A stretch of DNA of 63,232 bases, the filler included, from Sluysia triapertura (lineage: Eukaryota): NCBI GenBank assembly GCA_046118255.1. It is 5 parts of 5 records of this genome, joined end to end, with 100 filler letters (N's around TTAATTAATTAA, not from the genome) between each part and the next. Parts side by side here need not be neighbours in the genome. Positions count along the whole stretch, not along the records: positions 1 to 11,639 come from JBJNIA010182601.1; 4 more parts are not named here. The stretch is one strand, 5' to 3'. Position 1 is the stretch's first letter. Every line of letters begins with the position of its first letter. Made by a program: the position numbers and the translations under genes. The notes beneath the pieces were generated by a model, which ran no database searches, was not told the origin of the DNA, and saw only the letters and a list, made by a program, of their open reading frames with translations. Below, one piece after another: positions 4,105 through 11,639 of this stretch.

Positions 4105-4555
4105 TTATGATTTTATTTTATATCCTGAACACTATCATGCTCTTTTTCATGTATATTTTGCTGAAACAATCCTTTTAGTACTCTTCTCAATGCAATCTTT
4201 GTCCTGAATGTTTAAATCTGCTTAATATTTGTTTATCAGCTTCCAAATCAGTTAACCCATATAAATTATTTTTGTTTATTTCTAAAACTATTAGATCATT
4301 ATCGAGTCCATATCCTACCATTATCTTTCATTTCAATAATAATCCTACATAAATAATAACGGCTTGTTCATCTATTTGATTAATTAAATCCTTTTCAGTA
4401 AAATGTGTAATTCTTGTAATATAATCTGTTACATAATTTCCAGGTGTAATTTTAGCAGCAAATATTTCTTTTTCTTCACAATTTAACATTACTACACTTG
4501 CCAATCCTAACTTTTTATACTCTACTTGGACAAATTCAGCATCTAAAAATATCAA
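4105..4555 (-). pseudogene. DEDDh 3'-5' exonuclease, REX4/ISG20/AEN-like, disrupted
   Basis: Manual translation shows ExoI IFLDAEFV, then VTDYITRIT, an in-frame TGA at 4330-4328, and ExoII KIMVGYGLDNDLIVL. After a frameshift near 4200 it reads KIALRRVLKGLFQQNIHEKEHDSVQD (ExoIII HxxxxD). Motif order matches REX4/ISG20-type nucleases. Confidence 0.8.
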
Positions 4556-4589
4556 TCGATCTTTAATATTTTAAAAACCTAATAAAAAT

Positions 4590-4870
4590 TCATGCTGCAT
4601 AAAAATTAATAGGCAAAATTTTTAAATATTCCTGTAATGTAGGTTGTTTAATTATTGATGTGTGACTATGATGTGCACACCACTTAATAGACCTTTTCCT
4701 TGTCACTGAACACACTTTTGCTTGACTATAAATTAATCCTCTCTCCTGATATATGTGACACGTTTGATCATAAAGCTTAATAAATGTATTTGGATAAGTT
4801 TCACGACATTCTTCAGCATCCATTAGTGAAAATCTTTCTCCTAATGTAGCATTTTCACAATCGTATTGTT
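4590..4870 (-). pseudogene. degenerate double CCHC zinc-knuckle-like segment directly upstream of the exonuclease
   Basis: CHIYQERGLIYSQA...IKWCAHHSHTS resembles two CxxCxxxGHxxxxC knuckles with several ligands mutated. Same strand as, and adjacent to, the DEDDh remnant. Confidence 0.35.
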
Positions 4871-6580: not shown

Positions 6581-7936
6581 AAAGCATGATTTTAAAAGAC
6601 AGCCATTAATTGAGCAGCGTGTGAATTTAATAAAATCTACTTGGAATTTCGGGATCGATGCTTTTAGTAATCATCAGCAATTATTTATATCATTTAACCA
6701 ACGAGTTAACCTTAATGCCAATGAAATCCTGAGAGTAAATCAAGTTTTGAAATTATATTAACATTTATACTAAATGAGCATTTTATCTATGCTGAATTAT
6801 TAAATCTATACTTATATATGATGCCGAAAATGGAACTAATCATAACTTACTGGAATCAGAAGGTGAAATAAATCATACTAAAACCATGAATGAATTAGTT
6901 AATAAAGTTAGGTTCACGCAGTAATCTTACCTGTTGCATGCTAAGATCTCCATGTGGTATTTTCAGTTCTGCAGTGAAAAGAGCAGTTCCTATAAAACAT
7001 AATTTAAGGTCTAAAGTTTTACAATATTATTTGGCTGCTCAAAATTATGATCGTCATCCTGAACGATAAAACTTATAATTATGCAGCAAGATTTGTTAAT
7101 TCTAGATTACTCTGTTTCTCTGATTATTTGTCTCTGCTTAAATCCCTTCTCTCATTTTTTTTGTAAATAAAATATATCAATTATTGTCTTATTTTAATAA
7201 TTTAAAATTTATATTAATGTTTAAAACGATTAAATTAAATAGTAATTTAACAATTAATGAAGTCTCTTTCGTAAATTTTAACATAAATAACAAGCCAAAG
7301 TAAAAATAAAACACAAAATTAAATTGTAGAAATAACACGAAAGTCAAAGATGATTGGTACTGTCGGTGATAAGGGTAAGAACAGCTATGTCCAAAAATAG
7401 AATTAATTAATTAATAGAATAATTAATTATTGCAATTTTAATATAGTAAATTTTATTGTGAATTTTTATGTTCTGTGATTTTATAATTTGTAATTTGTAT
7501 TGAAAGTGTTTCATGTGTAAATTGAGTATAATTTTGGGTATGATTTTGTATGAATTCATGTGTGAAAGTGGTAACAAAACTATCGTGTGATTGAGACACC
7601 TACAATCTAGATATTAGCATTAATGCTATTCTGACTTATGTTCTTATTCATGCCACTGTTACTTTTACAATTCGTTGTTTCGAAGCATTACAGGTACGAA
7701 AACCACCTCTTTTATTGTGCCGAGTCACTTATTGATAATGAAGTTAATATTTTATGTAGCTAAATATCCTTGAGCTTCTAACATCAGTTGAAACAATACT
7801 TTGATAAATGCGCCGCTCACTCAAAATCATTTAATGTATGTAAATGTTAGCTTGCCTTAAATATAATGACTCCCTAACATAATCTATTTATTTTGGTTTG
7901 ACTGAGCAATCGAAATTATCACAGCGAGTTGCTTAA

Positions 7937-8008
7937 CACATTATGAGCGGGGCAGGTATTAGTACCCGTTTTATGTACTGTCACTTAAGAATACCCGCTC
8001 ATAATGTG
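7937..8008. mobile_element. 72-bp piggyBac-type MITE
   Basis: Perfect 15-bp TIR CACATTATGAGCGGG / CCCGCTCATAATGTG, flanked by TTAA on both sides (7933-7936 and 8009-8012). Confidence 0.8.
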
Positions 8009-8080
8009 TTAATTATAACTGCAGACGTAAAAACATAATAAATTAAAACATACAATATAAAATAATGTATTTAAAAATAT

Positions 8081-10278
8081 TTAATCTTTTAAATTAATCA
8101 ATGATTCATACAAATTAATAATATCATTACGATATTTATCATCAACCACATAAAACTTTGTTATAAGTGATTTAAAAACATCAGCAGATTTGGTAGCAAC
8201 ATACTGCAATTCTATTAAACTAGAACCAGTGAATTTCTGGAATATTTTTACATCAGATTGTAAATTTAAACTGGTTAACCATTTCATTACATCATCATTG
8301 GACCATTTCATCAATTTTCTTTCGCGATCATGAGCCAATAAATCTTGAGTTTTGCTTTTCAAAACAATTTTCAAATGTTTTACTAACAATTCACTACTAT
8401 CATTAAATTTATTAATATCGGAAAAATTAATGGTTTTATCGCAATAATTTCGTATTTCTTCAAATTGTGTAAGCTTCATTTTTTGATTTAGTATTAACAA
8501 AGTTATAGTTTTGCCTAATAAATAACCAAATTTATATAAACCCATACACAAATCATTGCTTATAAATCCATCCGATAATAATAATAATATAGATTTGGCT
8601 GATAAAAATTGATCAATTGTATTATTTAATAATTGAGTTTTTATACCATATTTGATAATTTGTTGATTTATTTTCATACCAAGGGGTTTATCTCTTGGTG
8701 AGACGCATACAAAAACGATGTCTTGTTGGCAATTTGAAATTTTATCAAAAGGAAAACAGAACTTTGATAAATTTCCATTTTCATATAATTTTAAACGACT
8801 GATTTTATTAATTTGCTTAACTAAATCATCAATATTATTCATTACATGATCCGAAGTTACAAAATTATATATTGTTAAACAGCTGTCCAAAACTTTCAAC
8901 CAATTTTTCGGTTTAAATTTCGAATCAATTAAACAAGCTTTAATTGGTATACGATATTTTATAGCTATTTCAAATTCAAAAACACATTTAATATCTTTTT
9001 CATAATCACTGGATAATAAAATCAAAAAACAAAATGATTTCTGTAAAGCATTTACAATTTTTTCCACTATATTTGCTTTCATATCAAAGCCTTTTTTCAA
9101 TAGAAATTTTCTATTTAATATATTAATAATTTTATCACATTTATTATGATCAGCTTCAATATAACTAATATATAGATATTTTTTCATTGGTACTTGATCC
9201 GATGATAAAGTATTATTTGGTGATTTAATATCAGAATTTAATTTAGTTACAATTGAATCGCAAATATTTCTGGTTTTATTTAATTTTTTCACATTACTTA
9301 TAAATTCTTCATCTTGTTTCAAAATATTTTTTATATCAATTTCTTCCAAGAGTAAATCACAAATTGATAAAAAAATTCGTATTTCTGATTCTTTATAGGA
9401 TAATTTTTCCAAATTAATCGAATTTATAAATATTTTTAAATTTTTGTTATTAAAAAGTTGTGGTATTATATTTGGAAATTTTATCAATTTAAAAATACTA
9501 TGTAATAATTCAATAAAATGAAAATATTCATTACAATGATCAATATTATTACCTGCATTAAATGTATGATCGAGTAATAATTCAAATATTTCTTTTTCTT
9601 GAATCAAAAATGAAATTTCTTTCTCTTTACTTATATCAGAATATAATATAAGTGAAGCCAATTTAAGATCTTTATCATTTGTTTGTTGAAATATTTTTGG
9701 TAAGTGATTCACTAAAAACTTTACATCAAATTTTAATTTAAAATTTTTTAGTAAATTAATAAAAATACATATAGAAGCAATTTGTACATCAATGACTTTT
9801 ATATCACTAAAATTGGTAAGTTTTTCTAATTTCTTTAGCATCACTTTTACTATTTGTTCGTATTCTGTATTAAATATATCACTAAAATGTTCTGTATATT
9901 CCCACAAAAATCCATAAGCGTTATAAACAGCCATCCAAATTTTATCATTTTTAAAATAATCCAAATCTTCAAATAATTGAAAATATTGAGCTAATATAAT
10001 CATAAAATCATATTTTAATAACACTTCATGATATTCCGTTAATTTGTCTTCAAATTCCAGAAAACCTTGATTTAATAATTGAAAACATTGTGATGTTTCT
10101 TCTAATGAACCGTTTTTCTGTTTTTTTAAATATTTAATGATATGTTTCATCGATGCAACTTCTGGCTTACGATGATAATGACCATATTTGCTTAAACGAA
10201 TGTTAAATGAATCTGAAAATTAAACCAAGTCGATAAAATAAAATATATACAAAAAAACTTACGTCCAGTTTTAATCAT
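8081..10278 (-). CDS. helical/ARM-repeat - TIR - TIR - SAM domain protein, ~715 aa, 2 exons (10278-10263, 10212-8081)
   Basis: The 689-aa ORF extends in frame through a 50-nt GTAAGT..TTTTCAG intron (10262-10213) to an ATG at 10278 (MIKTGHSFNIRL...). TIR1 (~9184-8840): YLYISY...ALQKSFCFLILLSSDYEKDIKCVFEFEIA...FKPKNWL. TIR2 (~8725-8380): DIVFVCVS...AKSILLLLSDGFISNDLC. SAM (~8313-8090): KWSNDDVMKWLTSLNL...FTGSSLIEL. The N-terminal half is Leu/Ile-rich and helical. Confidence 0.88.
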
Positions 10279-10859: not shown

Positions 10860-11639
10860 AGAACATACTTGCTTTAATGGTATTGACAATCACTATCAAT
10901 ATTGTTTGCAATTATAAATAAAGCTATCTCTGGCCTCCAAAACATTTAAGCTTTTGAGGTATCTGTAACCAGTTTTATGCAACGTTCCACTCCTTGAGTG
11001 TGGTTCATGTAATTCAATGTGAGTGGCTCATTGCTGAATTTAGCAATATCAATACTTTTGCCAGATGAAGGCGTCACATGTGTCAGATAGCTACTACCTG
11101 GTTCTTCAACCAGAACATAATGATCTTCAACATTAGTGTCACCGTACCACTTGCCATTTATGTTTACTTTGACCAAAGTTGTGTCTCGTCTACCATCAAA
11201 GTAAATACATGTGATAGCTTTTGGTGACTGTCGCATATCACATTGCAAACCCTTTCTTTACTTCAGTCTCTCACGGTGTACTTTATTCTTGTCTATCACA
11301 AAGCTTTGATTCTGCTTGGTTATGAACCCAACATCGATAAGCACTGGTGTTGCTATGGATGCTGCAGCTGTCTGATATACCATATCTGTCTGCTTCTTTT
11401 GCAAAATTTGGAAGGAGTATTCACATCTGACTTTCAGCTACATCATCACTACTACCTGTTTTATCATCACTATCATGAAGTACCTCGTCATCGCTTTCCT
11501 CTACAACACTTTGATCACTTTGTTACTAGATTGTTCTTCACTAAGATTTAAGTTACTCTCAACATCTGAAAATTTTCTTGACATTTTACATCTCGTTTCT
11601 TCTTTAGTTTTCCGTTGTAAACGCTTCTGCAATCTGGTT
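10860..11639 (-). mobile_element. internally deleted DNA transposase remnant, hAT-related (hATm/hATw-like invertebrate type)
   Basis: Reads AKEADRYGISD/AAASIA...VIDKNKVHRER, IYFDGRRDTT, EDHYVLVEEPGSSYLTHVTPSSG, joined directly to C-terminal HTQGVERCIKLVT. Contains a stop and a frameshift and runs into an assembly gap. The subfamily label is tentative. Confidence 0.7.

What the first reader, a model, noticed from the sequence alone, without database searches (positions are those of the whole stretch)
8081..10278. Intact ARM-TIR-TIR-SAM protein: SARM1's domains in permuted order, with one Glu-containing and one Glu-less TIR
Seen: this is the only long undisrupted ORF in a window full of decayed genes. 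It has a helical N-terminus, two TIR domains and a C-terminal SAM. TIR1 keeps the alphaC glutamate (KCVFEFEIA), while TIR2 has Leu at the equivalent position (LCMGLYKF). Known: SARM1 (ARM-SAM-SAM-TIR) and many bacterial and plant TIRs are oligomerisation-activated NAD+ hydrolases that need this Glu. Invertebrate ARM-TIR-SAM proteins exist but are poorly characterised. Inference: a cytosolic sensor-executioner in which ARM senses or autoinhibits, SAM polymerises, and an in-cis pseudo-TIR tunes or scaffolds the enzymatic TIR.
Basis: partly seen in the sequence, partly recalled or inferred. Interest (0 to 1): 0.72.

Follow-up and report, generated by a model that had tools for sequence, protein, structure and literature searches.

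The report
ARM-TIR-deadTIR-SAM protein gene, intact
This is an intact gene for a divergent member of a widespread animal ARM-TIR-SAM protein family (likely NAD+-cleaving immune or stress effectors), unusual only in having a second, degenerate TIR domain without the catalytic glutamate between the normal TIR and the SAM domain.

Summary
Window 8081-10150 (minus strand) is an uninterrupted 689-codon ORF in about 24% GC DNA, with a chance probability near 1e-26. It is the only ORF in the piece longer than 101 aa.

All four domain calls were verified:
- Residues 1-305 form an ARM-like solenoid.
- Residues 323-458 are a TIR_2 domain. Its Glu392 sits in the column of the catalytic Glu of SARM1/TIR-1, RPS4 and Cat1.
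- Residues 476-603 are a very divergent TIR, with Leu538 in that column and a shortened BB-loop region.
- Residues 608-689 are a SAM domain.

The SARM1 framing is analogy only. The protein belongs to a separate, widespread metazoan ARM-TIR-SAM family found in rotifers, molluscs, a nemertean, amphioxus and lungfish. Of 76 relatives annotated, 36 have ARM-TIR-SAM, and only the query has ARM-TIR-TIR-SAM.

Tandem TIR arrays are common in this genome and in rotifers, but their copies almost always keep the Glu. TIR2 most likely arose by internal duplication followed by catalytic death. Whether it regulates, scaffolds or merely spaces is untested.

The proposed 16-nt upstream exon and 50-nt intron are frame-consistent and have canonical splice sites, but homologues do not require them and no RNA data exist.

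Verdict: a new variant of a known kind, of modest interest.

The parts
8081..10150 (-). Complete single-exon ORF of 689 codons plus TAA stop (8083-8081). The first ATG is at 10150-10148.
   Evidence: Homologue alignments begin at query residue 3 (P0001 residue 7), so this ATG fits the family's N-terminus.
9236..10150 (-). Residues 1-305: ARM-like alpha-solenoid.
   Evidence: hhalign 98.3% and 62.2 bits against the family N-terminal profile built without the query; shuffle maximum 8.2. Family profile against PDB ARM proteins, E 6e-33. AF2 pLDDT about 90-97; VIA Z 17-18.7 over 275-298 residues to APC, beta-catenin and p120 ARM.
8777..9184 (-). Residues 323-458: TIR1, of TIR_2 type, retaining the catalytic-column Glu392 (codon 8977-8975).
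   Evidence: Pfam TIR_2 E 2.7e-6, 28.3 bits against a 28-bit cut-off. Family TIR profile 78.7 bits. The family Glu column aligns to the 'HKE' Glu of C. elegans TIR-1 and to the Glu of RPS4 and Cat1. AF2 gives a beta-alpha fold with pLDDT mostly 86-96. Divergent at some family-conserved positions: beta-B Trp lost, S386D, P405A, 'GS' replaced by 'AN'.
8342..8725 (-). Residues 476-603: TIR2, a degenerate TIR with Leu538 (codon 8539-8537) in the catalytic Glu column and a shortened beta-B/BB-loop region.
   Evidence: Family TIR profile 19.6 bits, 0 of 2000 shuffles at or above 12.4. hhalign 90.9% over 125 columns. Atlas feature neighbours are all TIR_2 clusters, 0.88-0.90. AF2 with family alignment A4: pLDDT 88, five beta-alpha units; VIA top 50 all TIR domains, Z 13.8-15.8, rmsd 2.0-2.6 A. 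Pfam alone gives only TIR_3 at E 0.056. AF2 without alignment cover gave pLDDT 22-69.
8084..8329 (-). Residues 608-689: C-terminal SAM domain.
   Evidence: Family SAM profile 53.6 bits. Profile A2 hits solved SAM domains: TEL/ETV6, liprin-beta, Shank2/3, and SARM1 SAM at E 2.4e-4 over 5-74 of 81 positions. Pfam SAM_3, SAM_2 and SAM_1 are weak, E 8e-4 to 0.07. AF2 pLDDT 81-96.
10213..10278 (-). Unverified and optional.
   Evidence: Read directly: the splice consensus is canonical and the reading frame is preserved. No RNA run holds the locus, and homologue N-termini coincide with the ATG at 10150. The spliced form was not joined or searched, and exon 1 is too short to search alone.

Best explanation
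This is an intact, probably single-exon gene of an AT-rich animal genome. It encodes a divergent member of the metazoan cytosolic ARM-TIR-SAM family.

Shown here:
- The four-domain architecture.
- The catalytic-column Glu in TIR1.
- Its replacement by Leu in TIR2, with loss of most of the BB-loop region.

Inferred:
- TIR2 arose by internal duplication of the family's own TIR and then lost catalysis. TIR2 matches the ARM-TIR-SAM-type TIR profile (19.6 bits) much better than this genome's other tandem-TIR type (4.7 bits).
- The protein works like other Glu-bearing animal, plant and bacterial TIR enzymes. The SAM domain drives self-association. That brings TIR1 domains together to form an NAD+-cleaving or cADPR-forming active site. 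The ARM solenoid holds the enzyme off or binds a trigger.
- The dead TIR2 sits between TIR1 and SAM as a folded, non-catalytic module. It changes the spacing or packing of TIR1, acting as a regulator or scaffold rather than a second enzyme.
For: Architecture and residues.

Family context:
- 66 distant relatives at E below 1e-3, all carrying TIR_2.
- 36 of the 76 proteins annotated are ARM-TIR-SAM, from rotifers, molluscs, a nemertean, amphioxus and a lungfish.
- The Glu is nearly invariant in the family: 81 of 86 TIR domains.

Duplication as a recurring process:
- Triple-TIR ORFs occur in this genome on C211983, C188022, C27515 and C56775.
- They also occur in Rotaria, and in the tunicate Clavelina.
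- TIR2 scores better against the ARM-TIR-SAM TIR profile than against the genome's tandem-TIR type.

Function by analogy:
- Glu-bearing non-TLR TIRs from animals, including rotifers and a mollusc, make cADPR in a Glu-dependent way, and a Rotaria sordida TIR depletes NAD+ (preprint 10.64898/2026.04.20.719644).
- Established knowledge of SARM1: ARM autoinhibition, SAM octamer, E642.
Against: - No expression data: no RNA run holds the locus.
- No orthologue is closer than 24% identity, so selection on TIR2 cannot be measured.
- TIR1 is itself divergent. It scores 28.3 bits against the 28-bit Pfam cut-off and lacks the family's beta-B Trp, the 'GS' of the BB loop, S386 and P405. Activity is therefore not assured.
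- TIR2's confident fold depends on an alignment chosen because it is TIR-like. Without it, AF2 gave a low-confidence helical guess.
- Direct TIR1-TIR2 similarity is not significant: BLASTP E 0.054, hhalign 0.8%.
- The ARM region shows no specific likeness to SARM1's ARM.
Confidence: 0.5

Rival explanations
1. TIR2 is a functionless relic. A tandem TIR duplicate lost catalysis and is drifting, tolerated only as an in-frame spacer between TIR1 and SAM. The protein otherwise works as an ordinary ARM-TIR-SAM member.
For: - TIR2 scores only 13.8-19.6 bits, against 60-170 bits for other TIR copies.
- It has lost nearly all family-invariant residues except Cys535, together with the BB-loop region.
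- Pfam does not recognise it at threshold.
- AF2 without alignment cover is unconfident.
- The genome holds decaying paralogue fragments of this family.
Against: - The frame is intact over 128 codons of very AT-rich sequence.
- The alternating hydrophobic strand/helix pattern of a TIR is preserved along the whole domain, with 125 aligned columns.
- The model is confident once homologues are supplied.
Confidence: 0.3
2. Neither TIR is an enzyme. The protein is a signalling adaptor or scaffold that uses TIR-TIR and SAM-SAM contacts, as MyD88 and Mal use their TIRs.
For: - TIR1 is divergent at several family-conserved positions around the BB loop.
- ARM-TIR proteins of molluscs have been discussed as possible TLR-pathway adaptors (PMC9334734).
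Against: - The catalytic Glu is kept in TIR1 and in 81 of 86 family TIRs.
- Glu-bearing animal TIRs tested so far are catalytic.
Confidence: 0.12
3. The ORF is a silent or recently dead copy, for example a retrocopy, that has not yet acquired stops.
For: - It appears intronless.
- It sits among broken genes and next to a very abundant MITE-like repeat.
- Close paralogue fragments elsewhere carry stops.
- No RNA run was found.
Against: - 689 stop-free codons at 24% GC have P of about 1e-26.
- Three of the four domains give confident folds without tuning. TIR2 did so only with the chosen family alignment.
- The second assembly differs by only one synonymous and one conservative change.
Confidence: 0.08

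Closest known systems
Metazoan ARM-TIR-SAM proteins. These are uncharacterised 'TIR domain-containing' proteins, some auto-named 'ADP-ribosyl cyclase/cyclic ADP-ribose hydrolase'. Examples: Patella caerulea KAK6192097, Tubulanus XP_074661452, Branchiostoma XP_035669833, Protopterus XP_043933463.
   Same: Collinear homology over ARM, TIR and SAM, for example query 3-447 to P0001 7-462. The catalytic-column Glu and the C-terminal SAM are shared.
   Different: These proteins pass from TIR to SAM through a linker of about 20-60 residues. The query has an extra 128-residue Glu-less TIR there. The query is at most 24% identical to any of them.
SARM1 / C. elegans TIR-1 (ARM-SAM-SAM-TIR NAD+ hydrolase)
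   Same: The same three domain types are present. The TIR Glu is in the equivalent column. The SAM profile hits SARM1 SAM at E 2.4e-4. The TIR2 model superposes on SARM1 TIR at Z 14.5-15.1, rmsd 2.1-2.3 A.
   Different: The domain order differs. There is one SAM instead of two and two TIRs instead of one. The ARM region is not specifically SARM1-like. It is not an orthologue.
Tandem-TIR proteins of rotifers and of this genome. Examples: Rotaria magnacalcarata CAF2093167 (TIR-TIR-TIR-SAM), Didymodactylos carnosus CAF1100478 (TIR-SAM-TIR), and the triple-TIR ORF on own-genome contig C211983.
   Same: Several TIR_2 domains lie in one chain, sometimes with SAM. The Didymodactylos protein also pairs a Glu-bearing TIR with a Glu-less one that has Thr.
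   Different: In those arrays the copies are well conserved, at 60-170 bits, and almost all keep the Glu. Here the second copy is barely recognisable and the protein keeps the full ARM domain.
Plant RPS4/RRS1 paired TIR domains (PDB 4c6t)
   Same: This is a working analogy: a Glu-bearing executor TIR is paired with a non-catalytic TIR that regulates it. 4c6t_B is among the structural matches of the TIR2 model at Z 14.3.
   Different: The plant pair is two separate NLR proteins interacting in trans. The query has both TIRs in one chain, with no NB-ARC or LRR. A regulatory role for TIR2 is untested.

Membership tests
Metazoan ARM-TIR-SAM family | N-terminal ARM-like region homologous to the family's | tested here: met
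   62.2 bits and hhalign 98.3% against a profile built without the query.
Metazoan ARM-TIR-SAM family | TIR_2-type TIR with the conserved Cys-x-x-Glu motif | tested here: met
   78.7 bits against the family profile; C389 and E392 are in the invariant and near-invariant columns.
Metazoan ARM-TIR-SAM family | C-terminal SAM domain of the family's type | tested here: met
   53.6 bits; the W, G and L invariant columns are kept.
Metazoan ARM-TIR-SAM family | TIR followed directly by SAM through a short linker | tested here: not met
   A second TIR-like domain of about 128 residues lies between them. The query is the only ARM-TIR-TIR-SAM among 76 proteins.
SARM1 orthologues | Domain order ARM-SAM-SAM-TIR | tested here: not met
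   The order here is ARM-TIR-TIR-SAM with a single SAM.
SARM1 orthologues | Catalytic Glu of the TIR (E642 equivalent) | tested here: met
   E392 lies in the family column that aligns to the TIR-1 'HKE' Glu. This is by profile alignment only, since no coordinate superposition was possible.
SARM1 orthologues | ARM domain with the NMN/NAD+ allosteric pocket | not tested
   The family ARM profile's best PDB matches are Vac8, beta-catenin and ARMC4. SARM1 is not among the 60 listed. Pocket residues were not compared.
Catalytic (NADase/cyclase) TIR domains | TIR fold plus Glu in the alpha-C position | tested here: met
   TIR1: Pfam TIR_2, a confident AF2 beta-alpha fold, and E392. TIR2 fails this feature, with L538.
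Catalytic (NADase/cyclase) TIR domains | Intact BB-loop region used for TIR-TIR assembly of the active site | tested here: inconclusive
   TIR1 is 2 residues shorter there than the family profile and lacks the family's Trp and 'GS'. TIR2 lacks about 9 or more residues there. The consequence is unknown.
Catalytic (NADase/cyclase) TIR domains | Measured NAD+ cleavage or cADPR formation | not testable with these tools
   This needs a biochemical assay.

The most novel reading that the evidence does not exclude
The dead TIR2 is a selected, in-cis regulatory pseudo-enzyme. It would be a single-chain animal counterpart of the plant RPS4/RRS1 executor/regulator TIR pair. In that reading it caps or orients the catalytic TIR1 within a SAM-driven oligomer and sets the activation threshold of an NAD+-consuming immune effector.
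Probability: 0.25. Interest if true: 0.55.

Novelty: new variant of a known kind. Interest (0 to 1): 0.33.

Why it matters
Animal TIR enzymes outside SARM1 are only now being shown to be catalytic (2026 preprint), and nothing is known about how the widespread ARM-TIR-SAM proteins are controlled. A natural protein with one catalytic-type TIR and one dead TIR in the same chain would be a convenient test case. It could show whether non-catalytic TIRs regulate catalytic ones in animals as they do in plant paired NLRs.

The protein is a single, very divergent orphan with no expression evidence. Its base architecture is common. The finding is therefore a useful annotation and a modest lead rather than a surprise.

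Tried and rejected
- Word-index homologue search found nothing, both with the protein and with the 67-sequence alignment. Candidates were probably swamped by AT-rich low-complexity words. The exhaustive HMMER search was needed instead.
- phmmer of the whole protein against PDB sequences gave only a chance-level hit.
- The genome search on the own genome with alignment A4 failed on the server. It was replaced by Pfam PF13676 and protein queries.
- Full-length AF2 did not resolve TIR2: pLDDT 22-69 with helices only. The TIR2 fold therefore rests on an alignment-guided model, which is partly circular, plus sequence statistics.
- No RNA-seq run holds the locus, so neither expression nor the 50-nt intron could be checked. 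Run X2 held only scraps.
- Rfam found nothing in the piece.
- SARM1 orthology is rejected: domain order, SAM number and ARM type all differ.
- Acquisition of TIR2 from the genome's other tandem-TIR type is rejected: 4.7 bits against 19.6 bits.
- An alternative genetic code as the cause of the 'decayed genes' is considered unlikely. Paralogue fragments carry mixed TAA, TAG and TGA stops.
- The spliced exon 1 + exon 2 model was not joined or searched as one sequence.

Full report
**The ORF**

On the minus strand, 8081-10150 is a 689-codon ORF ending in TAA, and the frame stays open upstream to 10219. No other ORF in the 11,639-base piece exceeds 101 aa. The piece is about 24% GC, so a stop is expected in 8.4% of random codons. 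A 689-codon open frame therefore has a probability of about 1e-26. A 1,992-nt contig from public run X1 covers 7989-9980 with two differences. One is synonymous (L418) and one is S381N. X1 may be the same sample, so this is weak independent support.

**Relatives**

The word-index search found nothing. The exhaustive HMMER scan of 1.84 billion representatives gave 66 hits at E of 1e-3 or better. The best was 2.9e-17 at 24% identity, so no close orthologue is in public protein data.

Named hits come from the following taxa:
- Rotifers: Rotaria and Didymodactylos.
- Molluscs: Patella, Potamilus and Haliotis.
- A nemertean.
- A tunicate.
- Amphioxus.
- A lungfish.

All 67 aligned proteins carry Pfam TIR_2. 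Eleven carry Arm and four carry SAM at Pfam thresholds.

I annotated 76 proteins with family-specific ARM, TIR and SAM profiles built from the hits. The result was 36 ARM-TIR-SAM, 12 TIR-SAM, 8 ARM-TIR, a few multi-TIR proteins, and one ARM-TIR-TIR-SAM, which is the query.

**N-terminus (residues 1-305)**

- A profile of 15 homologous N-terminal regions, built without the query, scores the query at 62.2 bits. The maximum over 1,000 shuffles was 8.2, and hhalign gives 98.3% over 285 columns.
- The family profile hits solved ARM-repeat proteins (Vac8, designed ARM, beta-catenin, ARMC4) at E down to 6e-33.
- The full-length AF2 model has pLDDT about 90-97 there. It aligns to APC, beta-catenin and p120 ARM domains at Z 17-18.7 over 275-298 residues.
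- SARM1's ARM is not among the matches shown, so this is a generic ARM solenoid.

**TIR1 (residues 323-458)**

- Pfam TIR_2 matches 327-404 at E 2.7e-6. The score of 28.3 bits only just clears the 28-bit cut-off.
- The family TIR profile gives 78.7 bits.
- The family's near-invariant Glu is present in 81 of 86 domains. It aligns with the Glu of 'HKE' in C. elegans TIR-1, and with the Glu in the equivalent motifs of RPS4 and Cat1. By established knowledge these are the catalytic Glu residues of the SARM1 E642 type. The query has E392 there (KCVFE; codon 8977-8975).
- TIR1 has lost several other family-conserved residues: the beta-B Trp, the 'GS' of the BB loop, S386 and P405.

**TIR2 (residues 476-603)**

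- Most homologues pass from TIR to SAM within about 20-60 residues. The query has about 150 extra residues there.
- Pfam sees only a sub-threshold TIR_3 match at E 0.056.
- The family TIR profile, built without the query, scores it at 19.6 bits. None of 2,000 shuffles exceeded 12.4 and the reversed sequence scored 0.4.
- hhalign gives 90.9% probability over 125 columns spanning the whole domain.
- An alignment-free language-model search with residues 466-606 returned mostly TIR_2 clusters as nearest neighbours, at 0.88-0.90.
- In the alignment, Cys535 matches the invariant Cys. Leu538 (LCMGL; codon 8539-8537) occupies the Glu column, and about nine residues of the beta-B/BB-loop region are missing.
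- AF2 on the full-length protein had no aligned sequences over this region and gave only pLDDT 22-69 with helices.
- Given an alignment of TIR2 with 73 family TIR domains, AF2 gave a five-unit beta-alpha fold (pLDDT 88, pTM 0.82). Its top 50 VIA matches are all TIR domains, including SPARTA TIR-APAZ, Hydra TRR-2, SARM1, MyD88 and plant TIRs, at Z 13.8-15.8 and rmsd 2.0-2.6 A.
- Foldseek ranks Hydra TRR-2 first, mixed with generic flavodoxin-like folds.
- That model is guided by the chosen alignment, so it is consistent with a TIR fold rather than independent proof.

**SAM (residues 608-689)**

- The family SAM profile scores 53.6 bits.
- A profile including the query hits solved SAM domains: TEL/ETV6, liprin-beta, Shank2/3, and SARM1 SAM at E 2.4e-4 over 70 of 81 positions.
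- AF2 pLDDT is 81-96.

**Origin of TIR2**

This genome (619 Mb in 263,945 contigs) has at least 36 TIR_2 matches. They include long open frames with three tandem TIRs on C211983, C188022, C27515 and C56775. Nearly all of those copies keep the Glu, at 21 of 22 informative copies.

Rotifer relatives also have TIR arrays. A Didymodactylos TIR-SAM-TIR protein has Thr in the Glu column of its second TIR.

TIR2 matches the ARM-TIR-SAM-type TIR profile (19.6 bits) far better than the genome's tandem-TIR type (4.7 bits). I therefore infer an internal duplication of the protein's own TIR, followed by degeneration. Direct TIR1-TIR2 similarity is not significant, so the event is old or divergence was fast.

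**Gene model**

- Homologue alignments start at query residue 3 (P0001 residue 7). The ATG at 10150 therefore already gives a family-typical N-terminus.
- No RNA run holds the locus.

**Mechanism**

What is shown is the domain architecture and the residue states. What is inferred comes from two sources. One is SARM1 biology: ARM autoinhibition, SAM-ring oligomerisation and TIR-TIR assembly around E642. The other is the 2026 preprint showing Glu-dependent cADPR production by non-TLR animal TIRs, including rotifer and mollusc proteins, and NAD+ depletion by a Rotaria sordida TIR.

From these I infer that SAM-driven self-association assembles TIR1 into an NAD+-cleaving or cADPR-forming enzyme, gated by the ARM domain. 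TIR2 cannot be catalytic by the Glu criterion. It may regulate or scaffold TIR1, which would make it an in-cis analogue of the RPS4/RRS1 pair, or it may be a drifting spacer. The missing BB loop weakens the simple partner-TIR idea.

**Comparison and novelty**

ARM-TIR proteins are catalogued in molluscs (PMC9334734). The TIR-SAM combination was catalogued in amphioxus, with cDNA support, in 2008 (PMC2575513). The family is therefore known but uncharacterised. The query is not a SARM1 orthologue. It is a new architectural variant of a known family, and it is modestly interesting.

Noticed in passing
window 7933-8012: A perfect palindrome with 19-nt arms and a 42-nt loop lies about 70 nt downstream of the gene's stop codon. 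Summed contig depth in run X1 is about 60,000 there, against about 17-100 over the gene. The genome search found 985 candidate copies, and the 39 other copies scored were 95-99% identical. This looks like a very abundant, recently active MITE-like element.
   Followed up: partly
window 4200-4560 (-): A DEDDh/RNase_T-type exonuclease remnant (weak Pfam RNase_T hit, E 0.023). An in-frame TGA interrupts what reads as one conserved domain, '...LLLK*KIMVGYGLDNDLIVLEI'.
   Followed up: partly
window 4590-4823 (-): A 77-aa ORF has a sub-threshold Pfam match to a Monjiviricetes viral fusion glycoprotein (E 5.6e-5, 21.7 bits against a 27-bit cut-off). It may be a fragment of an endogenous viral element. 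Observed only.
   Followed up: no
G000 contigs C237403, C51668, C220981 (loci L002-L004, L010): Fragments 68-85% identical to the ARM region of this protein carry TAA, TAG and TGA stops, so they are decaying close paralogues. None covers the TIR1-TIR2-SAM part. X1 contigs at 80-95% likeness with indels cover only 9227-10076.
   Followed up: partly
G000:C211983 (L018/L021), C188022, C27515, C56775: Long stop-free frames encode three tandem TIR_2 domains. The 769-aa frame on C211983 has a faint ARM-like match upstream. All informative copies keep the catalytic-column Glu. This indicates a lineage-specific tandem-TIR expansion.
   Followed up: partly
P0018/P0075 (Didymodactylos carnosus CAF1112032 / CAF1100478): This rotifer TIR-SAM-TIR protein has Glu in its first TIR and Thr in the same column of its second. 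It is another natural pairing of a Glu-bearing and a Glu-less TIR in one chain.
   Followed up: no
window 10946-11248 (-), within the GC-richer 11001-11500 stretch: A 100-aa ORF lies in a 39% GC island with no family match. The best Pfam hit has E 0.09.
   Followed up: no
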